Shown here one piece after another: positions 1-39,454 of a DNA stretch of 64,000 nt. The stretch's first letter is position 1, and each line of letters begins with the position of its first letter. Both the position numbers and the translations under genes were made by a program. Origin of the DNA: Oopsacas minuta (lineage: Eukaryota; Animalia; Porifera). The stretch covers positions 325,309 to 389,308 of the forward strand of contig JAKMXF010000312.1 of assembly GCA_024704765.1 (NCBI GenBank), written 5' to 3'. The notes beneath the pieces are model-generated. The model saw nothing but the letters and a program-made list of their open reading frames with translations, was not told where the DNA came from and did not search any database.

Positions 1-3000
1 GTAGTAATACTAGTCAAGTCACCACCCCATACAGCACAACTAGATTGAGCATCTAACCAGTTGATTCCATCACTCACTTCATACAATCGATAGCAAGATC
101 CATTATAGATCAGATCACATACACTGGGTGTTGCTGGAATCAAACAAATTCATTAATTTCATTAAACAACTACATGTAATGATCACTTACCTGGTTGACT
201 GCAGAAGTAACAATTTCTCATGTCACCACAACCTCGATTAATCCAACCGTTTGATAATACTGCTGCTACATTCCTGTATCTGAATCTAACACAGTCCCAG
301 GCAGAATTTCCACCTCCAGGATTCATTCCAAGAAGCGAATCGAAGTTCCTATAAGTACTGGTACTACCATCTACCCAAACAAATGCACTAGCATTAGTAC
401 CAGCATCTATATCTATATCGTTTAGACCAATAAAACATGAAAAGTATGTATTTATATCTGTACTGCTATAAAACAATAAGCTATCTTCTACTGCTGACTT
501 TATTGTAGCTAGATTTCCTCTAGTACCCCAGTTATTACAATTCAGTTGAGCACTTAACCAGTCTAATTTAGTAGAATTCGAGACAAATCCGAAAGAAGTA
601 TCACCATATGTAAATTCTTCATCTGGGATTAAAACTAAAAATATTAAAGAATAATTACTTTTCAAACTAGTATATTATAAAGTTATTCATGTCATCACCG
701 AATATATTCTACAAAATGTTCAAGCACAAAAAAAGAGTTTTCTTACATTCCTATTACGTGCTAATTTATAAGCAGAAGTATATACCTGGTCGAGGAGGTG
801 CAGATGTAATGTTAATCTGCATAGCTATCACTTCTTTTTGATTCCAGTTGTTATCAGTATAGAATGTGTATGTTCCAGCGTTTTCTTCCATAAATTCAGC
901 AATTTCTATCGTTGAGTCAGTAGTGTTCATATCTCTTGGAATATTCCATTTTCCAATTAGGTTGATGGATATAGAAATATCTATTGTTTCTAATGGTATA
1001 GCAATCTTATTCGTGGATGGATATGTTGATGAGAAGCTTTCAGCCAAGAATAAACCATAGAAAATTGATATTTCAGGAACTATAAATATGAAAATGATAA
1101 ATATATCAGTTTGTAAAGTGGACAATAAATATTGATCGAATACCTGTCACCGAAAGATAGATCGTAGCGATGGTAGTTCCTTCTCTCATACAGCTAAATG
1201 CTCTAGACTCTGTTGGTAATTTAGCACTCTCAATAGATATGTTGAATGGGTTATTATACATACTATCCCACATAATTGCACTCAAACTACCAATCTCAGT
1301 AGGATCACACAATAGTAATATATCTTCACTGTCTACTCCTACTAGGTATATGTATGTTACTCCTTCAACCGCAACTAGATAGAAAAGTTAGTGGAAAATA
1401 TTCAGAAATATCAATTAACTGTCTACTCACCTGTTGTTAAAGATGGATCATACAACCCAATTAGATAAGATGATGTACTGGTTTGACACTGATAATATCC
1501 TTGTTTATTAATATTAACTGCTAACCAACTTAATCCAGTTTCTGTACTACTATATGTTGCTGTCATACTTACACTGTTTGATAGATCTGAGTTTTCTGAA
1601 AAATTCCATACGATATTATTACTCCGTTCTCCTCCACATGCTAAGGTACGTGAAGTGAACAAGAAAGTGTTTGAGTTAAGCAGTTGGAAGTCAAATCTTT
1701 CGTTGGTAAGTTCTCCAAATCTATCAACTGAGAGTAGATAGGAATTAGAAATGTGAAAGGATCTTAGAATATAAATATTTAAAGTTACAAACCTATTGTT
1801 ACAGTACTAGTTGAAGCTCTTTTGCATACAAAAGTGTTTATAGTATCCTCACAGTTCACAGTTTCCCAACTAACACCTCCAGCTGTGTTAATCTCAATAC
1901 AATCACCATCATTAGATGGGGGATTTGTCCAGTTCGCATAGCTAAATGTTGTACCATCAGTCCAGGTATAAGTTCCCTCTTCACTCCTATCATTCAATCC
2001 TATCCAATAATTATTACTCATTATGATAGTGTATAAGTAGTTATTCTCTCTCTCTGTACTAATACTAGTCAGGTCACCACCCCATACAGCACAACTAGAT
2101 TGAGCATCTAACCAGTTGATTCCTGTACTTACATCAAATATTCGGTAACATGATCCTTCATAGATGAGATCACATACATTGGGTGTTGCTATAGGTAAAC
2201 AAAACACAATTATTGCTCCATTCTATATACAAACTTTATATACAAACTTTATATACACGATATAAGGTTACTCTCGGGTACCCAATGTATTCTTATACCG
2301 TGCATATTGTTATATAAAGGTCTTATTATAGTTGTATTTTGCATAAAATGTACAAATATGTTATTACCTGGTTTTATGCAGAAGTGACAATCTATTGGAG
2401 TATTACAAAAACCATTAATCCATCCATCTGATATAGGGCCAGCACCTCCTTCTTTATATCTGAATCGAACACAATCAAAATTAGCTACATCTCTAGGGTA
2501 TGTATATTCTAATGTTCCGAAGTTCCTATATGTGCTTGTGCTGCCATCTACCCACACAAATGCACTACCATTAGTACCAGCATCTACAAGTATATCATTC
2601 AGACCAATATAGCATCTAAAGTATGTTTGTATATCTGTTATACTATAATATAATAAATCGTCTTCCACTCCTGACTTGATTGTAGCAAGATTTCCTCCCC
2701 ATAAGATACAGCTGAGTTGTGCAGTTAGCCAGTCTATAGAAGGTGAATTGGTGAAATATCCAAATGTTGTTCCACCGAATGTAAATTCTTCTTCTGGATC
2801 CATAACTAAGATAGATTATGTATTTGTATAAAAAATCGATACATTCTGAGGTAAGTATATTCAGCGTGTATATATTCAAGAGCCTTTCATGTATGTAAAT
2901 TTTACGATATAATTCATAGAATATCTGTTTTAAGAATATTTTACCTGTAAGAGCAGGTGATGATGTAATGTTAATCTGCATAGCAATCACCTCTCCTTGA

Positions 3001-6000
3001 TCCCAGTTATTAGTATGGAATGTGTATATTCCTGCTTGCATGAATTCTGCGATAACTAAAGTGGAACTTGTAGTATCCACACCTTCTGGATCAGTCCATT
3101 TTCCCTCTAGGTTAATGGAGAGAGAAACATCTTTTGTTTCTAATGCGATATCAATCACATTCATTAATGGATATGTTAAGGAGAAGCTTTCAACCAGAAA
3201 CTGGCCGTAGTGAACGGACATTTCGGGGACTAAAGCAACAGTTTGTATGTATAAAGATAGCTTTTATTGAAATGATATGTAAATTTACCTGTAATTGAAA
3301 GATTGATAGTAACAATGGTGGTCCCTTCTCTCATACAGCTAAATGCTGTAGACTCTGTTGGTAATGTAGCACTCTCAGTATTTACGTGAATTGGGTTATT
3401 ATACGTACTATCCCATTTAATTGTACTCAAACTACCAATCTCAGTAGGATTACACAACAGTAATATATCTTCACTGTCAACCCCTACTATATACATGTAT
3501 GTTTGCCCTTCAACCGCAACTAGATAGATAAGTTGGTGTTATCAAGACTGTAAAAAATATGTTCAAAAATATTAGAGTGATCTACTTACCTGTTGTTAAG
3601 GATGGATCATACAATCCAATCGTATAAGTTGCTGAATTGACTTGACACTGATAATATCCTTGTTTGGTAATATCAACTGCTAACCAACTCCATCCAGCTT
3701 CTATATTCTCATAGGTTGGTATTTCTGGTTGACTAGATGATAGATCTGAATTCTCTGAAAATATCCATGTAATGGTTATATTCTCTTCTCCTCCATAAGC
3801 TAATGTATGTGGGGTGAACAAAAATGTGTTTTCACTAATTGTTACAAAGTCTAATCTTCCATTAGTAAGTTGTCCAAATCCTCCAGCTAAAACATATACA
3901 TATGCTATATCAAATTACTAGCGTTTATAGTATAATTAATATATACTGACCTGTTGTTACAGATGAAGCTCTTTTACATAGAAAAGCGTTTATCGTTGTT
4001 GTTTCACAGTCCACAGTCTCCCAACTACCTACCCCAGTTCTTATTATGTCAACACAATCGGCATTGCCAGCATTCGGTGTACCACCTTCCCAGTTTGTAA
4101 AAGTAGATGTTGAATCATCAATCCACGTGTACATTCCATCATTGTTATCTCTATCATTCAATCCTATCCAGCAATTACTCACTGTATCAGGGATAATAGT
4201 GTATAAGTAATTATTCTCTCTCTCTGTAGTAATACTAGTCAAGTCACCACCCCATACAGCACAACTAGATTGAGCATCTAACCAGTTGATTCCAGTACTC
4301 ACTTCGAAGACTCGATAGCAGAAACCATTATAGATCAGATCACAACCTTGTAAGTTAACTACAAATTTTAGACGATGAAATACCAGAAAATTCGGTTATA
4401 GTAACTAATGAGTAATAAGACTTTTTGATAAATATCAATTACCTTGTTTATTGCAGAAGTAACAATTTGTAGTATCAGTGCATGCTTGATTTTCCCAACC
4501 GATTGATAATTCACCAGTAGATTTGTATCTGTTTCTGACACAGTCCCAAGAGGCTGTTGCTACAGGATATGATTGTCCAAGTATACCGAAGTTCCTATAA
4601 GTACTGCTACTACCATCTACCCATACAAATGCATTAGCATCATTACCAGCATCATTTTCTATATCATTTAGACCTATCCAACATGAAAAGTGTGTATTAA
4701 TATCCGTACTACTATAGAACAGTAAGCTATCTTCTACTGCTGAGTTGATTGTAGCAAGATTTCCTCCCCAGTTCAGGCAATCAAGTTGACTAGTAAACCA
4801 TGTTGTATCAGTGGTAGTGAAGAACCCAATTGCTGAATTATCGTATGTTAGTTCAATATCTGGAGTTCCTAGAGGAATACATTTTATTAAATTCGATTAC
4901 TTTCGATATGATCGAAAGCTTTTCAACTGATTATATCGCATGTGAGTGGTATGGCAGATAACATACAATTCCTCAGGAAACAATGATAATATAACATACC
5001 TGTCACTGTAGTTGAAGATGTTAACTCAATTTGGATGATACATACTTCAACATCATCCCAGTTGTTAGTATAGAACTTGTATAATCCATCGTTTAGTGAT
5101 GAAAAATTTGGAATGGTTAAAGCAGATCCTGTAGAGTCCGTATCATCTGGAAGAATCCAACTACCATCAATATTGATTGACAGGATAACATCTTGTACTG
5201 CTGAAGGAACTGCTAGCATATTCATCTCTGGATAGAGTAATGAAAAGCTTTCAGCTGGTACAACACCGTAACTTATAGTTAACAAGGGAGCTATAAACAA
5301 TTGAATCCATAATTGAGATCAAAAGAATATTTCATTCAAAATACAAGATGTACCTATAACACTGATGGTATTTGTTGATAATAGATTTGCACCTCTCTTG
5401 CAAGTAAATTCTGTACTAGCCTCTGGTAAATCAGCTCTTGAGTTGTATATATTGATAGGATTTAAGAAGTCTCCGCCACTTGATAGAGTCCATCTCAACA
5501 TGCTTAAACTCCCACTTTCCATTGGATTACACAACAGTAATACATCCTCTCTGTCAATTCCAACTATATATTGGTATGATGAAGCTCCTGCTGCAACTAA
5601 ATAGAGGAATTTGCGGTCAATGAATTAGTAAGGAGATAATATCTGTGTTATTAAATCTCAATTGTTGTCTGTTCATTTGTTGTCAAGGAAAAGGATTTCT
5701 GGTATGCTATTATGAATTCGAATTTCGCGATCCCGATAACTATGAATTTATCGTGTAATCAAGAAAGTAAATAAAATGCTATAAAACTTGACTAAATATA
5801 TCAAATATGCGGAATCCGATTTTCACACTTTTGAATTAATCATATGTACATTTTTTGCCGCGCAGTGCGGGCAAGCGTAGCACGCTAGTATAGTAAATAT
5901 CAGAATAATCTACTTACCTGTTGTTAAGGATGGATCATACAATCCAATCGTATAAGTTGATGAATTGGCCTCGCACTGATAATAACCTTGTTTGGTAATA

Positions 6001-9000
6001 TCAACTGCTAACCAGCTCCATCCAGCTTCTATATTCTCATAGGTTGGTATTTCTGGTTGACTAGATGATAGATCTGAATTCTCTGAAAATATCCATGTAA
6101 TGGCTATATTCTCTTCTCCTCCATAAGCTAATGTATGTGGGGTGAACAAAAATGTGTTTTCACTAATTGTTACAAAGTCTAATCTTCCATTAGTAAGTTG
6201 TCCAAATCCTCCAACTAAAACATATACATATACTATATCAAATTACTAGCGTTTATAGTATAATTAATATATACTGACCTGTTGTTACAGATGAAGCTCT
6301 TTTACATAGAAAAGCGTTTATCGTTGTTGTTTCACAGTCCACAGTCTCCCAACTACCTACCCCAGTTCTTATTATGTCAACACAATCGGCATTGCCAGCA
6401 TTCGGTGTACCACCTTCCCAGTTTGTAAAAGTAGATGTTGAATCATCAATCCACGTGTACATTCCATCATTGTTATCTCTATCATTCAATCCTATCCAGC
6501 AATTACTCACTGTATCAGGGATAATAGTGTATAAGTAATTATTCTCTCTCTCTGTAGTAATACTAGTCAAGTCACCACCCCATACAGCACAACTAGATTG
6601 AGCATCTAACCAGTTGATTCCATCACTCACTTCATATAACCGATAGCAAAAGTCATCATAGATCAGATCACATCCTTGTGAGTTATCTATTCAAAAATTT
6701 GAAACTACATTTTGAGAATGAGTATTTCTAGTTTATTGAATTATATAAGAATGGAATTGAATTTATACCTCTATGTCACAGTGTTTCACCCTTATAGTAT
6801 GTATTATCTTGAAGTACTCAATTTCGGATATTTCTCATTAACAATTCGAGAACTACTGTTTTGATGCAAAATAAATATTGCAGAAATTAGCCTAATTGAA
6901 GTTACGTCACTAAAAATTGTAGATTGAACGTATAATATGTATTATACGTAATACGTCTTCGTTGAAAGACGTATTAAACATCTTAGCTTTATAATGTCTT
7001 GTGTCTTCCTTCCTTGAATGTATTATATTCAAGTGATACATATATTAAGGTCCTATATTGTCAACAATAATAACTTACCTTGTTTACTGCAGAAGTAACA
7101 AACTCTAGTAAAATGACACTGTCGATTAATCCAACCGGTTGATACTACACCTCCGACTTGGTATCTGAATCTAACACAGTCATGAATAGGATCATCATCT
7201 GAGGGGCTTACTATTCCAAAATCAGATCGGAAGTTCCTATAAGTACTGTTACTACCATCTACCCATACAAATGCACTAGCATTCGTACCAGCATCTACAT
7301 CTATATCATTTAGACCAATTGAACACGAAAAAGCATTATCTAAATCTGTTATGCTATAGAACAATAAGCTGTCTTCTTCTGCTGACTTGATTGTAGCAAG
7401 ATTTCCTCCCCAGTTGATGCAATTGAGTTGAGCAGTTATCCAGTTGATCCCAGAGGAAATTGTAAAATATCCAAAAGTGTTATCATCAAATATAAATTCT
7501 TCTTCTGGGTTCATTGCTAACAAACAAGATTATTATTATATTAATCATCAAATTTTGATTTCCATGAGTATACAATTAATTACATATATTAAGTAACTAT
7601 TACCTGTAATAGCTGGTGAAGATGAAAGAGTAATTTGTATAGCACACACATCAACTCCATCCCAGTTGTTAATATAGAATTCGTATAGTCCAGCATTTCC
7701 TGCCATGAAATTAGCAATTGTTGTAGTAGATCCAGTAGGCTCTGCTACCCCAAGAACAGTCCAGTATCCAATAATATTGGTAGAGAGAGTAATATCTTGT
7801 GTTGATAATGGAATAGCAAACGCATTGATAGCTGGACACACAGCCGTGAATTTACTAGCACTGATGCTACCAATTTGAATTGTTATTTCTGGAACTAAAT
7901 AAACACAATATTCATATAGATATAGTGAAACCTACAATGTAATATGTGCAAATGGAGACCAATACGATCTTTCCGCATCATTTCATTCTAATGGGCAGTC
8001 CATTATGTCATTTATGTGGCCGTTACTAATATGTTCCCCTCACAGCCTACGAAACTAAAGCCTATTCACGACATTTAACCATGGATTACTTCAAGTCTAT
8101 TAAATTTGACTTGCATTATAATTTATCGATAAAACAAAATCGGTGCATTTTGGCTCGAATAAATGTATCATTAATGGTTAATAATTTACAAATGCCATAT
8201 TATCCAACTATTATCAGTTTGAAATGACGTCATCTGTTTGGTTAGAAGGGCAAAATGTCCATCCATAGTACCTAATATAACTCAGTAACGTGACAACTTT
8301 ATCATTACAAAAATTCTATATTTTATATGTAAACATCCTTAGATCACTTGATATTAATTTTGGAATCGAAGACGCAATAGTGATCGTTTATCAGAGCTTT
8401 AAAAATGGTACATTTTTAACAACACTTTTCCCTTCTAACCAAACAGATGAAGTCATTTATAGCTGGTAATAGTTGGATAATATGGCATTTGAAAATTATT
8501 AACCTTCAATTATACATTTATTGAGCCAAAATGCACCGATTTTGTTTTATCGATAAAAATATAATTGCAAGTCAAATCTAATAAACTTGAAGTAATCCAT
8601 GGTCCATGAAATCCTAGACTGTGGATAGGCTGTAGTTGCGTAGGTTGTGTATTCTCCTGTATACTACATATCATATAATGAAACATAATTGATTAAATTG
8701 TTACCTTGCACGCTGATAAAGTTTGAAAATATAATACTTGAACCTCTCACACAATTTAAGTCAGTAGATTGTTCTGGTAAATTATTCCTCTCGTTGTATA
8801 TGTTGATAGGATTCAGGAAATCTTCACTACCTGTTAGAGACCACTTCAGTATACTTAAATCACCACTGTCCGCAGGATCACATAACAGCAATACATCCTC
8901 TCTGTCTATTCCTACTATATATACGTATTGAGTACCTTCTATTGCAACTAAATGTAAGAAATTGAGGTCAATAGATTAGTAAGTGGGATAATAATATGTA

Positions 9001-11595
9001 GAAATATTACACAGAGATATACTCACCTGTTGTTAATGAATTATCATATAAACCAATCGTATAAGTTAATGAATTGACTTGACACTGATAATATCCTTGT
9101 TTGGCAATATCAACTGCTAACCAGCTCCATCCAGCTTCCATATTCTCATAGGTTGGTGTTTCTGGTTGACTAGATGATAGATCTGAATTCTGTGAAAATA
9201 TCCATGTAATGACTATATTCTCTTCTCCTCCATAAGCTAATGTATGTGGGCTGAACAAAAATGTGTTTTCACTAATTGTTACAAAGTCTAATCCTCCATT
9301 AGTAAGTTGTCCAAATCCTCCAACTAAAGCACAAAATAATATATTTGCTGAATTTAATAGCTGCTATATATGGTATTATAGCATTGTCATGATACTGACC
9401 TGTTGTTACAGATGAAGATCTTTTGCATAGGAAAGCATTTGTCGTTGTTATGTCACAGTCCACAATCCCCCAACTACCCTCTCCAGTTCTTATTATGTCA
9501 ACACAATCTTCATCAATAACATTTGGTGCACTTCCTGTCCAGTTTGTATGACTATATACTGAACCATCAATCCAGGTATATGTTCCCTCTACACTCCTAT
9601 CATTCAATCCTATCCAGCAATTACTCACTGTATCAGGGATAATAGTGTATAAGTAATTATTCTCTCTCTCTGTAGTAATACTAGTCAAGTCACCGCCCCA
9701 TATAGCACAACTAGATTGAGCATCTAACCAGCTGATTCCAGTATTTACTTTAAATAATCGATAGCAAGATCCATTATAGATCAGATCACATCCTTGTGAG
9801 TTACCTATCAAGTTAAGTAAGAAAATTGAATAAAAGTATTTTCAACAGTTTAGTAATTTGAAAGGAACAAAATATATTTTATTTATATTTTCCCAGTTTA
9901 GTATTTTCCTTTCTTATTTGTATTATTTTAGTGTAACCATTGTCCAGGATTTTATACATTAATACAGGAATCTCGAGATTATTATTTTGAATAGTCAGAT
10001 CTTAAAATTATGTGATCAGAGATGAACTCCCTGAAGATGTCGAATTTTACCCATAGTATACTATTGCTACACATAACACATTATAACTCATTTTAGAACC
10101 TGCATGCAGCTATTATATAATCTTACTATCACAAAGCTATGTCTTTAACTTTTCTGAAGAATATACATAAATTCTTAAACTGGTTACCAGCGGCAGCTTT
10201 GTAATGTTAAATGAGGTCTCACGCTATTTCTATTACAAAATTGAACATCCATTCATATTTTATATAAATGTTTGTCAAATAATTATTAATATAATGTACA
10301 GGATCTTGTCCAGGACTTTGAAAATTATTTCCAGGAAAATTCCAGGAATTTTAATGTGTGATGCTGCAATATACTGGAATTAGACCTAAATATGCTGATC
10401 ACTGTAAAATTTATTTTTGAGGTTTATGTTTTACTACAATCACTTACCTGCTTTGTTGCAGAAGTAACAAGACCTAGTAGAGGCACAATCTCTATTAATC
10501 CAACCGGTTGATAATTCTCCTGCGTTATTGTTATATCTGGTTCTAACACAATCATGATTAGCGACTCCTGAGGGACTTGGTATACCAGGATTTGATTGGA
10601 AGTTTCTATAAGTACTGGTACTACCATCTACCCATACAAATGCAGTATCTACAGTACCAGCCTCTACAGTTATATCATTTAGACCTATATAACATGAACT
10701 ATAGAGTGTATTAGAGTTTGGTGCACTATAAAACAATAAGCTGTCTTCTACTGCTGACTTGATTGTAGTAAGATTTCCTCCCCAGTTATTGCATTCTACT
10801 TTGGCATTAGTCCAATTTATTGGGCTCACTATGAAGTATCCAAATGTTGTATCATCATATATTAGAGAAATATTAGGAGTTTGTGCTTAAGAAAGAGATA
10901 AAGAATATAATATATAATTTATACGTTAGTATATTGACTAGTTAATTCTATACAAAATTATCTAACAGAACCGTTTTACAAAGTCCTTGTACATATATAT
11001 TCTAATATTTACGTATAATTGTAGGTTATGTGTCGGACAAGTATTACAATTATTACAGCGTTAAATATATTCCATGTGGTCGTCCAAACTTTAATGGGAT
11101 TACTAGAACCTGCATTCCGATATTGTAAGGAACCTTTAGCCAAGCGTATCGTAGCAGGTAGCAAATATGGATACATTTATTTAAACTCCGCGAATTGTGG
11201 ATTATTATGGTGTCCAATGCTATTTTATCGGGCTGTAGCTTGGCCCGTATCAATAGTATTACCCTATGAATATTGGTTTGGTAGAAATCTGACCAACCTG
11301 ACCGCCTTTATAGCAATGAGTATAAACTAGGGTCAACTATGATATGTACCAAATTCTGTTTATTAACGACCCCAAGTGCAGTAGCTGGACAAAGGTCGTT
11401 ATGACAGACGCCCGCTACAAGCTATCGTATAAAAGTTATGATAATAAGGTTGACTGTTTATGAAAAGTAATATACATATTTGCTATTAGCTAAGTCAGAA
11501 AGTTTAAACATAATAAGATAGTTACCTGTTAAGATGCCGGAAAGTGAAGCACTTATCGTGAACAATAGAACAACTTGATAAAAGTTAGTTCCCAT
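1..11595 (-). CDS. Receptor gene 1: secreted/membrane protein with a repeated 5-exon module (CTLD-A, CTLD-B, Ig-like x3); 4 full modules plus a 5th running off the left edge (3' end not in window)
   Basis: Signal-peptide exon 11595-11526 (MGTNFYQVVLLFTISASLSGILT). Then GT-AG exons, all phase 1-1 with lengths divisible by 3: 10885-10448, 9804-9400, 9323-9027, 8947-8705, 7894-7604 | 7516-7079, 6686-6279, 6214-5918, 5596-5354, 5290-5000 | 4868-4443, 4358-3951, 3886-3590, 3519-3289, 3229-2945 | 2805-2368, 2188-1793, 1727-1431, 1374-1144, 1079-786 | 634-191, 133-<1. CTLD motifs W..AQ..C..WGG.L..I, WIGLND, W.DG, C...C. Ig-like C...W...GYYQC. Confidence 0.88.
3580..4295 (-). repeat. Near-identical intragenic duplicate tract, copy 1 (Ig1 exon + intron + most of CTLD-B exon)
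   Basis: Matches 5908-6623 at offset 2328 almost base for base, including the 64-nt intron; ORFs 3925-4302 and 6253-6630 differ only near their N-termini. Confidence 0.9.
5642..5888 (+). mobile_element. Non-autonomous Helitron-like insertion in an intron of receptor gene 1
   Basis: Begins TC after an A (5641) and ends CTAG before a T (5889), with a GC-rich imperfect hairpin (ttgccgcgcagtgcgggcaa, 5855-5874) ~10 nt upstream of the end and no TSD. Removing it leaves a 74-nt intron similar in size and sequence to the paralogous 79-nt intron 8948-9026. Confidence 0.68.
5908..6623 (-). repeat. Near-identical intragenic duplicate tract, copy 2
   Basis: See 3580-4295. Confidence 0.9.
8041..8649. 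mobile_element. ~610-bp foldback MITE with ~210-bp terminal inverted repeats
   Basis: Left arm (cacagcctacgaaactaaagcctattcac...accatggattacttcaagtc...gttagaaggg) is the reverse complement of the right arm (cccttctaaccaaacagatga...cttgaagtaatccatgg...gtggataggctgtagttgcgtaggttgtg). Lies in intron 7895-8704. Confidence 0.85.
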
Positions 11596-13131: not shown

Positions 13132-16100
13132 CTATAGTATTGCAGTATCACAGTAGTACTCATTCATCAGTGCGAAGCAAGATAAGTAGTGATTCTAGAA
13201 AATATTAATATATAAAGTTCCACACTGAAAATGGCTCAAATGTAAGAAATTCGCGCGAATATACAAATTTTAGTTTGAAACATTAGGTTGTGGGAAAAAT
13301 AGTAACTCACCAACTCTGGGATAGAATTCATTCTTTCACTTCTCAATTTCTTGATAATTTGGAAAATATCAACCTCATTCCTCCCAATACTTTCCTGTAT
13401 AGCTTTAAAGAGGGTATACAGAATGCCTGTTTTGGCTATACCATCTGAGCAATGTATTATGATAGGAGAATTTGGGTGATCGCTTTTATGGGAGTTTATC
13501 GCCTTCAGTAGCTTTACAATAGCGCAGATATCTGTAGGTTCATCTGAAGAACTCCATTTGGTAGATATAATCTGTGTGAACGTGTGCATTGAGCTATCTA
13601 GTGTATGTGTGAGCGTGATTACCTTTTTATCAATAGCTTGCCAATTATCACATTTTGTCATTGTTAGAATGAACGGTGCACATTTTCCAGGGCCGGAACT
13701 CGTTGGCCAATATTGTATAAACTCGCTCTGTCCACTTTCAATCAACATTTTCTCTGTATATGTTGTTAGCGTTACAATTAAGCTCGCTTTGAATTGGTAC
13801 ACCATTTGGAGGAAGTCTTGTAGCGAAAATACAGTTGGATTTAGTGTGATTATCATATTTGAGGATTCAAGGTAGGTTGCATTGATGTAGTCCGTTTCAA
13901 AGTGCTCTGAATAAAGTAATACGCGGTTTTTATCATATGGCAGACTGAATTTTAGATGGTTTTTATTCTTGTGCTTCGGATCTTTCGCGATAGAGCACGT
14001 TTCTTGGAATGCTTTCTCACATTGATAATTCAATTCGCTGAATTGTTTTAGAAAGGCTGATATATAACCATCTATATCTGACTTTAAATAGAGTTTGTAT
14101 GTGTTCGTAAAGTCTTTTGCTTGGATGGAAGTTTGACCGAATAACATCTCCAATACGGCCAAATATATGAATTTGTATTGACGAAATGTTTGTACCATCT
14201 GTGGACGATGTTCCCTCATCTCGTATACGATTCGATATATACTTATTGCTCTGCCTTTTTGTATAGCCTTTGCTAAATTGAATAAAGTCATGAATGTCCC
14301 TGTGCGGCCTACACCTGCAGAACAATGCACTAGAATAGGTGATCTCGTTCTTGAGATACCTTCATGGACTTTCCTGACGAATGAAAGGAGTTCATCGAAT
14401 TGAGTTGGGACATCGTGATCTGGCCATGCTGTATAATGGAAATGTTTGACGTCAAAGCTATGAACACTGTCTGTAACAGTAAATATTCGGACGGTAAAGC
14501 CTATATCCACAGTTTCACTTTTAAGAGCGATGTTATATACCCCAATCTGCAATATATTGTACTCGTCAGTTGGAAAATATCTCTCACATTTCTGCTTACC
14601 ATTTTCAATCAGTTTTGTTAGCATTACAATATTAACGATGTTATTTTCAATAATCATTTTCCAGAAATCTTCGATCGTCGTATCCTTCGGTGCCTGTGCA
14701 GCAATGAAGCTATTTGGTACATATACACCTGGTATAAGACTCGCGTTAATATAATCTGATCTCGGGCCTTCACTTCCATATTGACTCAGTATAACACGAG
14801 ATTTATCATATGGATATACTTGTTTATATTTATTCTTGTGTTTATTGTATACGACTAATGCATTATCGCATGCATATCTAAGCGTTTTTCCTCCAAGCTG
14901 TTCATATTCACCTTCCAATTCTCCTTCATTTTCCCAAATTCTATCCAACTGTGATTTGTACTGTTCTAATGGTATTGGTCTCATAATAGGATCGACTATC
15001 TCCTCTATCTCTTGGTAGTTGCCTGAGTCACGTTTATTAGCAGGTTCCATTCTATCATATATAGGAGTTATGCGGTCATAATGTGGTTCAATTGTGGCAT
15101 AACTGCCTGAACCTTGTGACGTTTCTATATCTGTCTCTACACGGTTTATAATGATATTTCTGTCTATATTGGGCACTATTCCGTTAAGGTGATCATTGTG
15201 GTAAGTCTCTGTGATGTTCTCAAGTCTTATAGAATCAATACCCTGGTTTCCTTTCTTTATACTGCAACAGTAGACTATACAGGAAAACATGAGACAGCAT
15301 ATTATTAGAGCTACAATTACGATTGCAGCTATTATTGGTATTAAGAATGGTAAGATTTCTATGATAAGTTCTGAGGTGGTTGTGGGTGTAATGTTAGTGA
15401 GTTGAATATCTGTGAAATTTCGCGATCTAACTGCAGTGAATGCGTATTCTAATTCTACTATGAATGTGTACTGTACGTTTAGTGCTAAGCCTGTAATATT
15501 GTAGGATAGTTGGGATGTTTCGCCAATTAGTTGTTCACTGACGTCATTTACTGAGTATATACGGAAATATTCTTCAGATAGGGGTATTGGTGTCTCTACT
15601 AACTCCCATTCTAATAAGATAGCTGTGTTGTCTATCTGTGTACTTGTGAGCTTCGAAATCCGTTGGATGAAAAAATCTATATACAGTAAAATGTGAAAAT
15701 AAGTATGATGAATCAGAATACAGTTAAACCTACACAAACCGGCTTGTGGAAACGGAGTGAAAATATATAGAGCAATACAAATGAGCCTCACAAACGGTGT
15801 GTCATTTCTCGGTGTCCCTGACACCCTGTTTGTGGTACTGATAAAAAATCTAAGAAAACAAACTTACTCTGCACTACAAGATTAACCATCATCAGTAAGG
15901 TCCTTGTTTGATCCCATGTTTGTTCAGAATACAGACTATAAACTCCGTTATCTTCAATCCTTACCACACTGATCTCCACACTATTCTGTTGAATAGTTAC
16001 CCCATTCGGTAAGACCCATTCAACATTCTGGATATTAGAGGAGAGCACTAATTTTCTTGTTAAGACGTCGAGAGGCAATTGGTTTTGATTTGGAGGTAGA

Positions 16101-19100
16101 AGAGATAGCGAATTGATGTTATTACTAACAATAGTAATTGGAGGACCTATAGAGAATACTAGCATAATTAATATGCCTTTAGCAGTACCCTTCGCTCATA
16201 AATATTAATAAATAATACCTTGGACAAGCACGCTTGCTGTTAACAATATCATTCCATCCAATAAATGAGTACACAGTAGAGTAGGATCTGTATCCACTAA
16301 CTCAACACCATTCTCTCTTATATTAAGAGGATTAGATAGGTTAGTTGCGTTGATGCCTTGCCTTCTCCATGCAGTGTTGTGCAAAGATGCATTGGCAGTT
16401 GTGTTGCAGTATAGAATCGCTTCAAAAGTGTCTATACCCACTATATATGTATAGTTTACCGTTGGGAGAGCAACTACATTGGTAGAAAAGTGGATAACAT
16501 CTTGTGAAAACGTAAAATTTCGCAGTATAGATTATTTCTCACCTATTAATCGACTGAAGTTGAATACCCCTGCCAAAAATGTTAAGGGTATTCCGCCCAT
16601 GCTAATCTCACATCGATAGAAACCTGAATCAGATACAGTCAGCTGACTCAGACCATTGACAGTTTGTGTTGCGTTACTTGTCACATCAGTTGTGTTTGAT
16701 AAAGATCCTTCACTGTACGTCCATCTGGTGGTTAAGTTGTTCTCATTTACACATATTAATATCACTGATTCAGTGAAGTATGTTGCATTATTTAGAACGA
16801 TTGATCCATTAGGAGGCAGCACTCTCCCAAATAGACTAGCTGCAGAAAGAACTATGATAAAACTTGTACTCGCTTCGAGCAATCGCTTTTGGCCGAACTT
16901 ACTGACTTTAAGCATTGATTGAGTATCATGTCCCGTCAAAAAAGTGGAATGACACAGTATTGTGGCAGGCACGGTAACACATTGTCTTGCTAAAAGACTA
17001 CTTGTTTTGCATGTATGCACGAAACTTAACTATTTTTTCTATCTATATATGTAACTTACTTGCTTTTTTGCAAAAATAGCAATCATATGTTATAGAACCG
17101 TTGACATTAATCCATCCTATATCATCAGTAAATGTTTGAAGATATGTGCCATCTTCTTGAGGCAAATTGTTGGTAGGTTCAAAGTCAAAGAAATTCCTGT
17201 AAGTGCTGTTGGAGCCATCAATCCATGAGAATTGATCTCCATCTAGTCCAGCTTCTATATCTCTATCATTAAGTCCAATCCAGCATCTTCGATCAGTTGT
17301 ATTAGATATATTTGTGAATATATCACTCTCAATGGCCGATGCGATGCTAGCCAAATGTCCGTTGAAAGTAAGGCAATTCATTTCTGACTCGGCCCAAGTT
17401 AATCCTGTGTCCACAATATGAAATGTGATGCATGATCCCTCATATATTGCATCACAGTAGTCAGCAATACCTAGTTTAAAGAATTCGTTATTTAAATCCC
17501 AATACATGACATTATCAGGGATTTATCAAGGCCAGTTCAGCAGCCATGAAGACACAAAGTGTCGATTATGAGACCCAGGTTAGTAAAGGATCAATACCGC
17601 CAAAAAGGTGCCATCCCATGAAAGTGCCTACAACAAAAGTGGCGTTCCAAGATTTCCTGGATAAACTCCTTGGCTTAGACATTATTTATTATATCTGTAG
17701 GCATTATATATTATACCTGTTGTAGTTATGCGTATCTGTGTAGCAAGGACCTCTTCATTATCACAGTTGAAAGTATAAAACTGAAATATTTCATCATAAG
17801 TTTCATACAAATCATTTATAACCAGGACACTCTCTGTGAAATCCTCGCCTCCGAGCAATCTCCATGTACCCATTGATAAACTGCTTGAGAGGGTTAATGT
17901 CTGTGCTGGTAAAGGTAGAGATATAGAGTTCAAGTTAGGAGCTATTTGGCTATGAATCTGATTCTGTCTTCCAGAGTATGTTAATGATATTGTAGGAGCA
18001 CCTAAAGGTAAGCAAACATGAAATATATCAACAACAAATATGGAGCGAATTTCTAGTCTCATAAATGAACTTCATAAACGAGAAACTAGGTATCACTTTT
18101 CGGTGTCCCTGGCGCTGACATTCCGTTTATGGAGGTTACACTGTACTTACCTTGTAAGTTGAGTGATGCTGTCAATAATACTACGTCATCAGCGGTGATA
18201 TCAAAACATTCTAGAACATTCTGATTTGTTGGAAGAGTATCTCTGTTTACAAATATGTTTAACGGATTAGTATATACTATGCTATCTACTCGCCATCTAA
18301 TATTTGCTAGCGGTATTGTTGGAGATAAATCGCATAAGATTTCAATGTTTTCTCTGTCTAGACCTATCGTATAGTTGTATGAAGATCCGTCACTTGCAAC
18401 TATAATATATGAGAATCAGTAAATATTAAATATCTTTGCACATCCAGATTTAAATTCAATATTGCAAAGCAGATTTCGAAAAATGTCCGGCAAGAGTTTC
18501 AAGTTAATCGGCCAAAATGCATGGCAGAAAATTGAAAGCTCTAATTGCACACCATAAGACCATTCAAATGAAATGTAGATAAGTTCATGAAATGTTACAC
18601 TTTTGGATCGGTTTTGACAATTTTTGGAATTTGATCTCTAAAATTGAAAATTCTTCACATATTACATTACCTATTGTTTTATTCATATCGAACACTCCTG
18701 CGGTGAAGAACACAAAATCTCCAGCATTTTGTGTAACTCTACAACGATAGAATCCTTGATCTCGTGTATTGACAGATAGAGTGCTTAGACCTGTTGCTGG
18801 ATCCCAAGACGTTGCTTCTAGTGTAGTTGAAAATGGAGCATATGAATCTGTTGCAAACGTCCAAATAACTTCAGTATTCGTTTCTGTTACGCAAAAGAGA
18901 ACTTCGTCTGTGAATAGTATAGCATTGTTACTGAGAGCTGTATGTACACCATTTGTAACTGTGCCAAATTGTATTACTAAAAAATTCTATATAAATATGG
19001 GAATTACGCTATGAATGATATTACACTTACTGTCTCCACCGCATATATAGCATTTTTTATTTGTATTACAGGAATCATAATTCCATCTCTCACTATTGCT

Positions 19101-19812
19101 ATACTTTGTTTCAACACATTCTCCATCTATAACAGCAGTAGTTGCACTATTAAATAATTGGAAAGCACTCAAACTTCCATCAGCCCATACATATCTGCCT
19201 AAGTTTCTAATATCATTCAATCCAATCCAACATCTACTGCCTGGAATTATTGTAAGAACTAATTTGTGTTCTTCAACATTCCGTATTGTTGCTAATGTAT
19301 AGTTATCTTCTTCACATATATTTTGTGATTCTTGCCATGTTTTTTCTTCATTTGGACCTCCAGTTGTTCTTATGTGCCTGAAGCAGTATCCGTTTAGAAT
19401 ACCTTGACATCCAAAACGTGGGACTATTGAAATTAAATGAATTATAAATGGAGTTATTATGAACCCATTATGTTAATTTCCAGAGATTATATATGTTAAA
19501 TCCATGTATTTTTACACACCCATAAATAGCAATTTCAGGCTATTATTTGGGGAAATGGCACAGAAATTTCCAAACATTTGATTTCTTGTAAATTCTCGGG
19601 GTAATCCATCAGGGATCCCGTCAGCATTGGAAAGTATGAAATAATTACTTTAAAAACTCGTTTTACTGACTATGGTATCCATGAACAGTTTGTAGTTTAT
19701 ACCAAAGCTGTAGAAAAGTAATACTATCCCTGTTCTTACCTTGACAAACTGCAGTTAAGATATTTACAATCAATATCGTTGTAAATAGAAAATATTTGGA
19801 TTTAAAATACAT
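13132..19812 (-). CDS. Receptor gene 2: receptor-type protein tyrosine phosphatase, SP-(CTLD-Ig-Ig-Ig)x2-FN3-TM-PTP D1-PTP D2
   Basis: Exons 19812-19740 (SP MYFKSKYFLFTTILIVNILTAVCQ), 19423-19031 (CTLD), 18976-18671, 18399-18151, 18001-17717, 17470-17060 (CTLD), 16839-16543, 16473-16219, 16146-15868, 15676-13311 (FN3, TM ILPFLIPIIAAIVIVALIICCLMF, D1 KNKY/WPDHD/HCSAGVGRTG/QTFRQY, D2 HCSDGIAKTG), 13194-13132 (stop). All junctions keep frame. Confidence 0.9.
17515..17673. mobile_element. Possible short MITE with degenerate TIR (cagggatttatcaagg / cctggataaactccttg)
   Basis: Imperfect ~17-bp inverted ends bracket a more GC-rich intronic stretch. Confidence 0.35.
18065..18143. mobile_element. Tc1/mariner-like MITE (AACCTCCACAAACGG family)
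   Basis: Ends ccgtttatggaggttacactg|TA, with internal ttttcggtgtccct shared with copies near 15780, 23470, 55990, 62814 and 63945. Confidence 0.7.
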
Positions 19813-37356: not shown

Positions 37357-39454
37357 ATGTGTGTTAGAAATTCGATATTTATTTCATTTTTACTGTTCTT
37401 GTTGATTGTTATTGGACAAGGTAAGTTGTATTCCTTAAAATGTAATCCAGTTTTACAGCCAGTATTTGTAGCCATACGAATTCAATTGAATATTTATCTC
37501 TCTCTTCGAACATTGGCTATTGACATTACGCGTTTAAGATACAGTGTATGCCGGTTTTAAGCACACACTTGGGATTAGCGATACATGTACTTATAACCGG
37601 CATAAATATAAGGGAATATATGAGAACTGTTTTCCAGAGGATTGTTCTTATAACCGACATACAATGCATCTATTATAGGTAGTTATATTCAAGAGATCGA
37701 GATTATAAGCATTATAGCCCTCAATGAAAATACAGTATTAATATCATGGGATCTTAAAGTCCCACTCTTACAGAATTCAACTGAAGTTTTCCACATACAC
37801 TACGGAAGGTATAATACAAATACTTATGCTGGACACACGAATAATCAAAGCTACATACTCCGTGACCTCACAGCTGGGATATCCTACAGAATATACATAG
37901 CTATGACGTATGTATTCTCTAATATAACATACAAAACTGACACATACCAATTCAAGATTGAGAAAATTCCTGCTACAGAGATGAATATACCCAGTATTGC
38001 TGCTATTTCTATTGTCGTATCCTTGACTATATTATCTATTGGGGTTTTAGTGATAGTATTGGCGATATGTGGGCTGAAACGTGTTGGAATTACAGGGAAA
38101 TTTGTTCGAGAACGGCTGCAATTGAATGGCAAAACAAACAGTAATATATGTATGATTACATCATCTGAATGTAATAGTGGGAATATTACATTGAATGATA
38201 CAGCTGAAACTCGTAAGAATGCGATTTCTATCGAAGAAACTGTGATAGAACAAGGAATTGATATTGATTCGATATATTTCGCGAATATCAGTCAGAACGA
38301 TTGTAATGTTAGCGAAATAACTAACGTAATTGAAACGGAAAGTATATCTGATATTCCAGACGTTTTAAATACTGAAAATGCAGACCAAAGAGTTGAATAT
38401 ACTCCCGAACAGCTCAGTGAAAATCTTTCTGATAAAACATACACAATTCCACCAACATTAAGCAAAGATTTGAATGAGACATATGAAATTACATACAAAG
38501 ATGTTGAAAATATTGATCAACAAAATACAGAAATTGTTTTCAATATTGAGCTCGAGTTTGAAGCATTAAACGCTGAAACAAGTGAGCAAAACTGTGAATT
38601 TGATGTGAATAATATTACGCTTGAATCGCCAAATTTTGAAGGTTACACACTAAATGCAAGTTACCTTTATAATGCAAATATTATTGCGACAATACACCCA
38701 ACGCGTAGGAGGGATTTCCTACAACTTGTGTACCAAAGTAAATGTAGTTTAATTGTAATGCTTACGAGTAGGCTAGAGCAGCAAAGTATTATAGCTAGAA
38801 CATCAGAGTATGTACGATATTGGCCAGTTGATGAATACACAAATGAACAGGAAGATACGCTAATTGAGCAGGAGATATCTTTACAGCATAGTGTCGAAAA
38901 CAATAGTATATCATTCAAACATATAATATTTACTGGGTGGGATGATAACGGTGATATTGAAGACATATCGAATGTTATTAAGCTGCTGCGGATAATACAA
39001 ACACATAAAGAAATGAACATGAATACTCGAGTAATAATACATTGTAATGATGGCGTAACGAAGACTGGGATATTAATGACTTGCTATACTGCATTACAGG
39101 ATATGGAGGATAGGAATTGCTATAATATTGAAGATATTGTGAGAGATCTAAGACAGCAGAGAACAAACATGTTGCCAACCCTTGTAAGTTATTTAATTGT
39201 GCGATATATTCTCATTTTTGCATACAGTGAAACCTCAATACGAACACAGTTAATTGGAATTTCCGTATAAGACGTTTAAATGTTCACCAATGGTTATTGA
39301 GATTACACCGGTTAATACGAACTCAGGATAAAGCGTACACATTTTGACCGCCTCTTGGTGTTCGTATTCACTGCATTTACTAAATTTATATTTCTAGACA
39401 TCTTACAGAGCTTGTTATCGTATCATGGAAGAATTCTCATCACTACAGCAATGA
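37357..39454 (+). CDS. Receptor gene 5: truncated RPTP paralogue, SP-FN3-TM-acidic linker-D2-only pseudophosphatase
   Basis: Exons 37357-37420 (SP MCVRNSIFISFLLFLLIVIGQ), 37694-39183 (FN3 ISWDL...YILRDLTAGISYRIYI, TM IAAISIVVSLTILSIGVLVIVLAICGL, E/T/N/D-rich stretch, D2-like NASYL...DFLQLVY...YWP...HCNDGVTKTG...LRQQRTNMLPTL), 39398-39454 (TSYRACYRIMEEFSSLQQ*). No HCSAGVGR or WPD. Confidence 0.85.
39225..39373. mobile_element. pogo/Tigger-like MITE in the last intron of receptor gene 5
   Basis: TA|cagtgaaacctcaatacgaacac ... gtgttcgtattcactg. Confidence 0.65.

What the first reader, a model, noticed from the sequence alone, without database searches (positions are those of the whole stretch)
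13132..19812. RPTP with C-type lectin domains in its ectodomain
Seen: a complete frame-consistent model, SP-CTLD-Ig3-CTLD-Ig3-FN3-TM-D1-D2, with intact D1 catalytic motifs. Established: vertebrate RPTP subtypes R1-R8 use Ig, FN3, MAM, carbonic anhydrase-like or cadherin-like domains, not CTLDs. Inference: a lectin-type pattern receptor coupled directly to a phosphatase, a possibly undescribed architecture.
Basis: partly seen in the sequence, partly recalled or inferred. Interest (0 to 1): 0.75.

Follow-up and report, generated by a model that had tools for sequence, protein, structure and literature searches.

The report
Glass-sponge receptor phosphatase with lectin domains
This is a real, intact gene of the glass sponge Oopsacas minuta for a cell-surface tyrosine phosphatase whose outer part carries two C-type lectin-like domains; the protein is already in GenBank and UniProt, and it belongs to a family of about 15 such loci that I could not find discussed in any paper.

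Summary
An 11-exon gene on the minus strand (19812-13132) gives one open frame of 1658 aa. All ten introns are GT..AG, and introns 1-9 are phase 1.

The domain order is: signal peptide, CTLD, three Ig-like domains, CTLD, three Ig-like domains, FN3, TM, D1, D2.
- D1 keeps the catalytic motifs (WPD, HCSAGVGRTG, Q-loop).
- D2 has Lys in place of the catalytic Arg and no WPD loop.

The genome matches Oopsacas minuta (61.46 Mb, 365 scaffolds). The spliced model is letter for letter GenBank KAI6650358.1 / UniProt A0AAV7JNE2, which carries the BLAST-derived name "RPTP alpha isoform X4". So the protein is not new to databases.

The architecture also occurs elsewhere:
- two annotated paralogues in this genome (996 aa with 1 CTLD; 2484 aa with 6 CTLDs);
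- independently, an ascidian protein (Styela clava XP_039259559.1).

Genome-wide, 61 of at least 150 CTLD exon matches lie upstream, on the same strand, of family PTP exons, at 15 loci (about 1 expected by chance). Four of these loci have an active D1-D2 tail. Eleven have only a D2-like pseudophosphatase tail.

Neither glass-sponge genome paper mentions phosphatases or lectins, and I found no paper on this domain combination.

Verdict: a real gene, already deposited, and an undiscussed variant of a known kind. Interest is moderate.

The parts
19740..19812 (-). Exon 1: start codon and signal-peptide-like N-terminus (MYFKSKYFLFTTILIVNILTAVCQ); ends in phase 1 at a GTAAGA donor
   Evidence: hydropathy window aa 7-26. 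The paralogue P0059 starts with a similar leader.
19031..19423 (-). Exon 2: C-type lectin-like domain 1 (8 Cys; no EPN/QPD; WNY instead of WND)
   Evidence: Pfam Lectin_C 1e-13. Closest solved structures: PLA2R, mannose receptor, NKG2D, DC-SIGN CTLDs. Motif columns.
18671..18976 (-). Exon 3: Ig domain, type a (C...W...GxYxC pattern)
   Evidence: Weak Pfam Ig_2/I-set. The profile of 7 paralogous exons hits titin/CEACAM1/NCAM2 Ig domains at 2e-10 to 1e-5.
18151..18399 (-). Exon 4: Ig-like beta-sandwich, type b (conserved YxY..G.D, C...W...NP...C)
   Evidence: Alignment A1. AF2 model pLDDT 90. Best structural matches are Ig-like domains, only at Z 5-6.3 / Foldseek E>=0.03.
17717..18001 (-). Exon 5: Ig-like beta-sandwich, type c (no disulfide pair; invariant W; GxYxF)
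   Evidence: Alignment A2. AF2 model pLDDT 88, eight strands. Foldseek E 1e-3 to 2e-2 to Ig-like/PKD-like domains.
17060..17470 (-). Exon 6: C-type lectin-like domain 2 (EPT and W-I-N at the Ca2+-site positions; C2-C3 cysteine pair lost)
   Evidence: Pfam Lectin_C 7e-11. Closest solved structures: DEC-205, PLA2R, Endo180 CTLDs. ENA orthologue ORFs at 58-61% identity keep the same altered motifs.
16543..16839 (-). Exon 7: Ig domain, type a (second cassette)
   Evidence: Pfam Ig_3/Ig_2 E 0.013. 36% identical to exon 3. Member of profile A3.
16219..16473 (-). Exon 8: Ig-like, type b (second cassette)
   Evidence: 31-35% identical to exon 4.
15868..16146 (-). Exon 9: Ig-like, type c (second cassette)
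   Evidence: Aligned with exon 5 and paralogous exons in A2; tblastn hits to type-c exons of neighbouring genes.
13311..15676 (-). Exon 10, one long exon: FN3 (about 15656-15453), TM (about 15362-15270), tyrosine-rich juxtamembrane stretch, D1 (14846-14148; WPD at 14426-14406, P-loop HCSAGVGRTG at 14327-14298), most of D2 (from 13973; P-loop HCSDGIAKTG at 13454-13425)
   Evidence: Pfam Y_phosphatase 1e-119 with two stretches and fn3 E 0.01; PF00102 matches in genome coordinates; motifs; hydropathy.
13132..13194 (-). Exon 11: last 20 residues (…NHYLSCFALMNEYYCDTAIL) and stop codon; preceded by a 116-nt intron (GTGAGT..CTAG)
   Evidence: With this exon the window reproduces P0265 letter for letter. 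Paralogue P0059 has the same small last exon.

Best explanation
This is an intact receptor-type protein tyrosine phosphatase gene of the hexactinellid sponge Oopsacas minuta, already annotated as KAI6650358.1. It encodes a type I membrane protein.

Shown here:
- The ectodomain is two copies of a four-exon cassette (CTLD, then three Ig-like domains) followed by one FN3.
- The cytoplasmic part is a tyrosine-rich juxtamembrane stretch, a catalytically competent-looking D1 and a D2 that lacks the catalytic Arg and the WPD loop.
- Every ectodomain module is one symmetric phase-1 exon. That structure explains how cassettes were duplicated and shuffled.
- The gene is one member of a glass-sponge-specific, tandemly clustered RPTP family. 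In that family, CTLD/Ig cassettes of varying number sit on either an active D1-D2 tail or a D2-only pseudophosphatase tail.

Inferred, not shown:
- The ectodomain binds an extracellular ligand, which could be a protein or a glycan. Binding changes clustering or access of D1 to phosphotyrosine substrates, as in other RPTPs.
- D2 and the conserved juxtamembrane YxEI/YxNL motif serve regulation or docking.
- The ligand and the biological role are unknown. Candidates are cell-cell or self/non-self recognition, or microbe sensing.
For: - Exon structure and open frame.
- Identity to P0265 = KAI6650358.1 / A0AAV7JNE2.
- Domains.
- D1 and D2 motifs.
- Genome identity: 61,460,524 bp in 365 contigs matches the O. 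minuta paper. P0059 (O. minuta) maps at 99.7%. P0121 and P0266 (LOD99_6037, LOD99_6036) map at 100% to the window.
- The published gene models came from BRAKER/Augustus with RNA-seq hints.
- Same arrangement elsewhere in the genome: 61 of 150 Lectin_C exon matches lie within 35 kb upstream, on the same strand, of family PTP exons at 15 loci, against about 1 expected.
- Annotated paralogues with the same combination: P0059 and P0264.
- Conservation in other glass-sponge assemblies: the last exon is 70-72% identical to P0001. The CTLD2 exon is 58-61% identical to ENA ORFs on contigs of the same lengths as those that carry PTP orthologues.
- The tree places all Oopsacas and ENA copies in one clade (100/100), apart from the other animals' RPTPs included.
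Against: - No transcript or protein evidence could be examined here. The join of the CTLD exons to the PTP exon rests on splice logic, on the RNA-seq-hinted published model and on recurrence at other loci.
- Because all ectodomain exons are phase 1-1, any subset is also in frame. Frame consistency alone therefore proves little, and isoforms that skip cassettes are possible.
- Phosphatase activity, ligand binding and the role of D2 are untested.
- The Ig-like calls for exon types b and c rest on modest structural scores.
Confidence: 0.88

Rival explanations
1. The published model and the reader's model wrongly merge two genes: a secreted CTLD-Ig protein upstream and a short-ectodomain RPTP downstream.
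For: All ectodomain exons are phase 1-1, so merging costs a gene predictor nothing. The genome paper itself removed an aberrant prediction of about 48,000 aa. CTLD arrays without any PTP exon nearby also exist, for example on contigs C343 and C188.
Against: - Exons 2-9 contain no stop, no TM and no alternative last exon.
- A signal-peptide-like start was recognised only at exon 1, though I ran no dedicated scan for internal first exons.
- Exon 9 lies only 191 nt from exon 10.
- The same same-strand arrangement recurs at 15 loci against about 1 expected.
- Two paralogues are annotated the same way.
Confidence: 0.06
2. One reading: a carbohydrate-binding pattern-recognition receptor, a true lectin wired directly to a phosphatase.
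For: - Both CTLDs pass Pfam's cut-off.
- Their closest solved relatives include sugar-binding receptors such as mannose receptor and DC-SIGN.
- The one characterised hexactinellid lectin (Aphrocallistes vastus AVL) is a Ca2+-dependent C-type lectin and a putative aggregation factor (abstracts and reference lists).
- CTLD2 and its orthologues keep an E/Q-P-T ... E-D ... W-x-N pattern.
Against: - CTLD1 has none of the EPN/QPD residues and has WNY in place of WND.
- CTLD2 has EPT and a shifted Asn, and lacks the C2-C3 disulfide.
- The best-scoring solved relatives (PLA2R, DEC-205) are mostly non-sugar-binding CTLDs (their binding behaviour is from my own knowledge).
- Many CTLDs bind proteins.
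Confidence: 0.2
3. A decaying or unexpressed copy in a fast-turnover multigene family, intact only by chance.
For: The family contains fragments and copies with stops, for example PTP pieces with in-frame stops and contig-edge fragments.
Against: - All 11 exons are open with canonical splice sites.
- D1 motifs are perfect.
- An orthologue in another glass-sponge assembly keeps an open frame over the whole last exon at 70-72% identity.
- CTLD2 orthologues keep the domain-specific peculiarities.
Confidence: 0.04

Closest known systems
Oopsacas minuta paralogues P0059 (NCBI 'RPTP epsilon isoform X3', 996 aa) and P0264 (2484 aa)
   Same: Same genome and same family clade. Signal peptide, CTLD(s), Ig-like domains, TM, D1-D2. 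One-domain-per-exon ectodomain. D1 motif HCSAGVGR[ST]G with WPD.
   Different: One CTLD and one Ig in P0059; six CTLDs in P0264; two here. P0059's D2 keeps the catalytic Arg (HCSDGIGRTG), this gene's D2 does not. About 47% identity in the PTP part.
Styela clava (ascidian) LOC120336018, XP_039259559.1 / XP_077976615.1
   Same: Lectin_C x3, then Ig, then a tandem PTP in one predicted protein.
   Different: Only about 36% identical in the PTP part. In the tree it groups with the Hydra and Branchiostoma RPTPs, outside the glass-sponge clade, so the combination most likely arose independently. It sits on a long branch, so its exact place is unsure.
Vertebrate LAR-type (R2A) RPTPs: PTPRF, PTPRD, PTPRS
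   Same: Type I receptor with Ig-like domains, FN3, TM, an active D1 and a regulatory D2. These are among the best non-sponge sequence hits, at about 30-32% identity.
   Different: No CTLDs. Three canonical Ig plus 4-8 FN3 in R2A. Not orthologous: the sponge family is a separate clade from the non-vertebrate RPTPs included in the tree.
Vertebrate RPTP alpha/epsilon (R4), the name given in GenBank
   Same: Tandem D1-D2. PTPRE is among the best vertebrate hits, at about 31% identity.
   Different: R4 ectodomains are short and lack domains (own knowledge). This ectodomain has about 950 aa with 9 modules. The GenBank name comes from a best BLAST hit, not from orthology.
Mannose-receptor family (MRC1, PLA2R, DEC-205, Endo180)
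   Same: Closest solved CTLDs. Type I membrane proteins with several CTLDs in tandem.
   Different: Those proteins have an N-terminal ricin-type domain and an FNII domain, 8-10 CTLDs, and a short endocytic tail without any enzyme (own knowledge). There are no Ig-like spacers.
Mammalian C-type lectin-like receptors that signal through phosphatases in trans (Ly49/ITIM-SHP-1; Dectin-1 with CD45/CD148 exclusion)
   Same: A CTLD ectodomain functionally coupled to tyrosine dephosphorylation (titles and abstracts).
   Different: There the lectin-like receptor and the phosphatase are separate proteins. Here they are one polypeptide.

Membership tests
Classical receptor-type PTP (class I Cys-based, Pfam PF00102) | PTP domain above the curated cut-off | tested here: met
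   Y_phosphatase 398.7 bits against a cut-off of 20.9, two stretches.
Classical receptor-type PTP (class I Cys-based, Pfam PF00102) | Catalytic motifs in D1: P-loop HC(X5)R, WPD loop, pTyr-recognition Tyr (KNRY), Q-loop | tested here: met
   VHCSAGVGRTG and WPDHDVP. KNKY (Tyr kept) and QMVQTFRQY are read directly from the translation.
Classical receptor-type PTP (class I Cys-based, Pfam PF00102) | Signal peptide, single TM, extracellular modules N-terminal to the PTP domains | tested here: met
   Hydropathy windows at aa 7-26 and about 950-991, plus one weaker window inside exon 8. No dedicated signal-peptide predictor was available.
Classical receptor-type PTP (class I Cys-based, Pfam PF00102) | Phosphatase activity | not testable with these tools
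   Needs a recombinant D1 assay.
Catalytically active D2 | P-loop Arg and WPD Asp in the second domain | tested here: not met
   IHCSDGIAKTG (Lys for Arg) and no WPD-like motif in D2. The Q-loop is also absent in the translation.
Vertebrate R4 subtype (PTPRA/PTPRE), as named in GenBank | Short glycosylated ectodomain without domains; orthology to PTPRA/PTPRE | tested here: not met
   The ectodomain has about 950 aa with 2 CTLD, 6 Ig-like and 1 FN3. All sponge copies form their own clade. No vertebrate sequence was included in that tree.
C-type lectin-like domain superfamily (Pfam PF00059) | CTLD fold signature above the curated cut-off | tested here: met
   52.3 and 43.2 bits for the single exons (cut-off 22.6), 81.3 bits for P0265. 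PDB CTLD hits down to 5e-22.
Ca2+-dependent carbohydrate-binding C-type lectins | EPN or QPD tripeptide plus the WND motif at Ca2+ site 2 | tested here: not met
   CTLD1: SAT / WNY. CTLD2: EPT / W-I-N, with the C2-C3 cysteines lost. This lowers the claim that it is a classical lectin; it does not exclude other ligand binding.
Immunoglobulin superfamily | Ig domain recognisable by sequence profile or fold | tested here: inconclusive
   Type a exons: met (E 2e-10). Types b and c: confident beta-sandwich models, but only weak, generic matches.
Fibronectin type III | Pfam fn3 above cut-off | tested here: inconclusive
   16.5 bits here against a cut-off of 25. 29.7 bits at the same position in paralogue P0121. 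PF00041 is listed for orthologue P0001.

The most novel reading that the evidence does not exclude
Glass sponges carry a large, clustered repertoire of modular CTLD/Ig receptors, not discussed in the literature I could search. It comes in two forms: with an active tandem phosphatase tail (4 CTLD-bearing loci) and with a D2-only pseudophosphatase tail (11 loci, which carry most of the long CTLD arrays).

The novel reading is that this is a paired signalling/decoy receptor system for self/non-self or microbe recognition in a syncytial animal. It would be a form of recognition receptor built on phosphatases rather than on kinases or ITIM/ITAM adaptors.
Probability: 0.15. Interest if true: 0.75.

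Novelty: new variant of a known kind. Interest (0 to 1): 0.4.

Why it matters
RPTP classification (R1-R8) is built on vertebrates. This gene shows that an early-branching animal lineage put C-type lectin-like domains on RPTPs and expanded that design to about 15 loci, most of them ending in a pseudophosphatase.

It also conflicts with a published survey that found only about one C-type lectin per sponge species. This glass-sponge genome has at least 150 CTLD exon matches.

If the family proves to be a recognition repertoire, it would give a concrete molecular handle on self/non-self or microbe sensing in hexactinellids, where nothing of that kind is known.

As a database matter, the gene itself is not a discovery. 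It is deposited, with a misleading BLAST-derived name.

Tried and rejected
I therefore could not fetch the ENA contigs that hold the orthologues (P0001, P0004, P0005) to see whether CTLD exons lie directly upstream. Only matching contig lengths link them.
- The first word search with the last exon could not show the full-length protein, because of its length window (1531 aa at most against 1658 aa). It appeared only when the longer neighbour P0121 was used as the query.
- The exhaustive representative search did not list P0265 itself. It did yield P0121 and the Styela protein.
- Pfam alone left four of the six Ig-like exons unassigned.
- Foldseek gave no match at E<=0.001 for either folded exon type.
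- The ESM Atlas holds the sequence but returned no cluster with Lectin_C plus Y_phosphatase.
- Paper searches for the domain combination, for phosphatome surveys and for hexactinellid lectin receptors found nothing on such a receptor. A remembered 'lectin-type RPTP' in the sea urchin phosphatase survey could not be found and is not used.
- I rejected R4 (alpha/epsilon) membership and a true lectin function, for the reasons given in the membership table.
- The joined (spliced) protein was assembled only inside scripts, to check the frame and to compare it with P0265. It was not sent to any database search. Searches used single exons by reference or database protein ids.
- The contig is not human.
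Full report
**What is in the sequence**

The window is eukaryotic, with GC about 0.35 and short introns. On the minus strand between 19842 and 13239 there are ten stop-to-stop segments. Scanned by reference against Pfam, they give:
- Lectin_C twice: 19472-18990 at 1e-13 and 17522-17046 at 7e-11;
- weak Ig hits in the segments that follow each CTLD;
- an 875-aa frame with a weak fn3 hit, a hydrophobic stretch and two Y_phosphatase domains (1e-119).

**The gene model**

I read the junctions directly and checked them in scripts. There are 11 exons and ten GT..AG introns of 54-316 nt. Introns 1-9 are all phase 1, and each ectodomain module is one exon. The joined frame has no internal stop.

The last small exon (13194-13132) was found by comparison with the database protein. 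With it, the window reproduces P0265 letter for letter, 1658 aa.

The joined sequence was built only inside scripts for these checks. Searches used exons by reference or database ids.

**Whose genome it is, and whether the gene is known**

The window's assembly has 61,460,524 bp in 365 contigs. The Oopsacas minuta genome paper reports 365 scaffolds and about 61 Mb. Three NCBI O. minuta proteins map to this assembly:
- P0059 at 99.7%;
- P0121 (LOD99_6037), with exon matches at 97.9-100% to the window;
- P0266 (LOD99_6036), with exon matches at 97-100% to the window.

P0265 is KAI6650358.1 / UniProt A0AAV7JNE2, 'Receptor-type tyrosine-protein phosphatase alpha isoform X4 [Oopsacas minuta]'. It sits on a contig of 410,180 bp, which is the length of the window's contig. 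Its precomputed Pfam list already holds PF00059 and PF00102.

That annotation came from BRAKER/Augustus with RNA-seq hints, and its names came from best BLAST hits. The gene is therefore deposited. The 'alpha' name is not an orthology statement.

**The domains in detail**

*CTLDs.* Both are above Pfam's cut-off. Their nearest solved relatives are CTLDs of the mannose-receptor family, NKG2D and DC-SIGN. At the positions of the Ca2+/sugar site:
- CTLD1 has SAT and WNY.
- CTLD2 has EPT and W-I-N, and has lost both cysteines of the C2-C3 pair.
- The ENA orthologues of CTLD2 share the same peculiarities. This argues for constraint, but not for classical lectin activity.

*Ig-like exons.* They fall into three types.
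- Type a (exons 3 and 7) is a clear Ig. Its profile hits titin, CEACAM1 and NCAM2 at 2e-10 to 1e-5.
- Types b and c give confident AlphaFold beta-sandwiches, with pLDDT 90 and 88.
- Their matches are only generic: Foldseek E 1e-3 to 3e-2, VIA Z up to 6.3, almost all to Ig-like, PKD or FN3-like domains.

*FN3.* It is sub-threshold here. It passes the cut-off at the same position in paralogue P0121.

*Phosphatase domains.* D1 has KNKY, WPDHDVP, VHCSAGVGRTG and the Q-loop. D2 has Lys for the catalytic Arg, no WPD and no Q-loop.

*Cassette duplication.* The two cassettes of this gene are 19-36% identical exon by exon. The internal duplication is therefore old.

**Is the join of CTLD exons to the PTP exon real?**

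Frame consistency alone is weak evidence, because every ectodomain exon is phase 1-1. Stronger points are:
- Exons 2-9 have no stop, no TM and no alternative end. The only signal-like start I recognised is exon 1.
- Exon 9 lies 191 nt from exon 10.
- The published RNA-seq-hinted model makes the same join.
- Two paralogues are annotated with the same combination: P0059 (signal peptide, CTLD, Ig, TM, D1-D2) and P0264 (six CTLDs).
- The arrangement recurs genome-wide. Of the 150 Lectin_C exon matches, 61 lie within 35 kb upstream, on the same strand, of a family PTP terminal exon. They fall at 15 loci, against about 1 match expected by chance.

I could not look at transcripts.

**The family**

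The window alone holds four PTP terminal exons plus the CTLD-CTLD-Ig3 cassette array at 1 to about 10,900. That array runs towards a fifth PTP exon just left of the window.

Two tail types exist:
- D1 (HCSAGVGR[ST]G with WPD) followed by D2, which in most copies reads HC..G..K[ST]G.
- A single D2-like domain (mostly HCEDGISKTG, no WPD) in a last exon of about 540 aa.

Of the 15 CTLD-linked loci, 4 have the active tandem and 11 have the D2-only tail.

A maximum-likelihood tree of the cytoplasmic parts shows the following:
- All Oopsacas copies and the ENA glass-sponge ORFs form one clade (100/100), apart from the Geodia, Ephydatia, Hydra, Branchiostoma and Styela RPTPs.
- This gene pairs with ENA ORF P0001 (70-72% identity). 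An orthologue therefore exists in another glass-sponge assembly.
- The CTLD-bearing genes L001, L002 and L003 share a clade. P0059's gene sits in an unresolved fork with an Ig-only gene. One gain with a loss, or two gains, cannot be told apart.

**Elsewhere in life**

About 240 RPTP relatives were listed with precomputed Pfam domains. Only the three O. minuta proteins carry PF00059.

A CTLD profile built from the sponge exons, run over all 377 proteins fetched, found one more: P0222. This is Styela clava XP_039259559.1, with Lectin_C x3, Ig and a tandem PTP. It lies outside the sponge clade, on a long branch, so the combination most likely arose twice.

Other tunicate RPTPs in the lists carry ricin-type lectin or sushi domains. 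Invertebrate RPTP ectodomains are evidently freely shuffled.

**Literature**

- The two glass-sponge genome papers contain no occurrence of 'phosphatase' or 'lectin'.
- A 2024 review of RPTP ectodomains mentions C-type lectins only as separate receptors.
- Searches for the domain pair, for phosphatome surveys and for hexactinellid lectin receptors found nothing on such a receptor.
- A survey of C-type lectins reported about one per poriferan species. That does not hold for this genome.

**How it most likely works**

Shown: a type I receptor with a modular CTLD/Ig/FN3 ectodomain, a D1 that looks active and a D2 that looks inactive.

Inferred from what is known of RPTPs: ligand engagement alters clustering or substrate access of D1, and D2 regulates.

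A juxtamembrane tyrosine motif sits at a fixed distance before D1 in 15 of the 19 family members with a detectable D1 P-loop (20 examined). Its forms include YQEI, YEDI, YHEI, YLEI, YQNL, YENI and YQSI. It resembles SH2-binding sites, which is a lead only.

Whether the ligand is a glycan is open. The canonical lectin site is not kept.

**Verdict**

It is overstated on novelty, because the protein is deposited, recurs in this genome and is present in an ascidian. It is also overstated on function. The more interesting object is the family as a whole.

**Limits**

No expression data were available. The counts from the genome search are lower bounds.

The scan's earlier first-reader notes on the same window describe the cassette array, the head-to-head Ig-type RPTP pair and a D2-only receptor. 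They agree with what I saw independently.

Noticed in passing
window 1-10900 (minus strand) and L031:8463-9998 (= G000:C312:323771-325306): A long array of repeated five-exon cassettes (CTLD type B, CTLD type A, Ig-a, Ig-b, Ig-c; at least 11 CTLD exons). It runs towards a terminal exon just left of the window that carries a single D2-like domain (HCEDGISKTG, no WPD). This is probably a giant CTLD-rich pseudophosphatase receptor.
   Followed up: partly
G000 loci L013-L016, L018-L020, L022, L025, L026, L028, L030, L031: A subfamily whose last exon of about 540 aa has only one PTP domain of the D2 type, with Lys for the catalytic Arg and no WPD. 11 of the 15 CTLD-linked loci end this way. These look like pseudophosphatase receptors paired with the active ones.
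   Followed up: partly
window 37654-39267 (+): A D2-only terminal exon (HCNDGVTKTG) begins under 1 kb after the stop of the Ig-type RPTP P0121, with only an FN3-like stretch ahead of it (tblastn 37720-38076).
   Followed up: no
window about 14900-14990 (minus strand; aa about 1080-1110 of P0265) and homologous positions in P0001-P0006, P0010, P0012, P0019, P0024, P0059, P0121, P0264, P0266: A conserved juxtamembrane tyrosine motif, Y-x-[E/N/D/S]-[I/L] followed by x-[E/D]-[I/V]-x-[D/N]-P-x-M-x-P-I-x-L, lies at a fixed distance before D1 in 15 of 19 family members. It resembles SH2-binding sites (pYEEI / pYxN).
   Followed up: partly
G000 genome-wide: At least 150 Lectin_C exon matches in a 61-Mb sponge genome. 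They include tandem arrays with about 1-kb spacing that are not near any PTP exon (contigs C343, C188, C44, C14). A published survey reported about one C-type lectin per poriferan species.
   Followed up: partly
P0222 / P0378 (Styela clava), P0131 and P0293 (tunicates): An ascidian RPTP with three N-terminal CTLDs, and tunicate RPTPs with ricin-type lectin and sushi domains. These are independent cases of lectin-type modules on RPTPs.
   Followed up: partly
window 17060-17470 and ENA ORFs P0372-P0374: CTLD2 and its orthologues have lost both cysteines of the C2-C3 disulfide and share an E/Q-P-T ... E-D ... W-x-N pattern. This is a conserved, non-canonical version of the CTLD long-loop region.
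   Followed up: partly
window 46001-48000: A local composition jump (GC 0.43 against about 0.35, AT skew +0.29). An earlier first-reader note places a repeat-rich protein gene here. I did not examine it.
   Followed up: no
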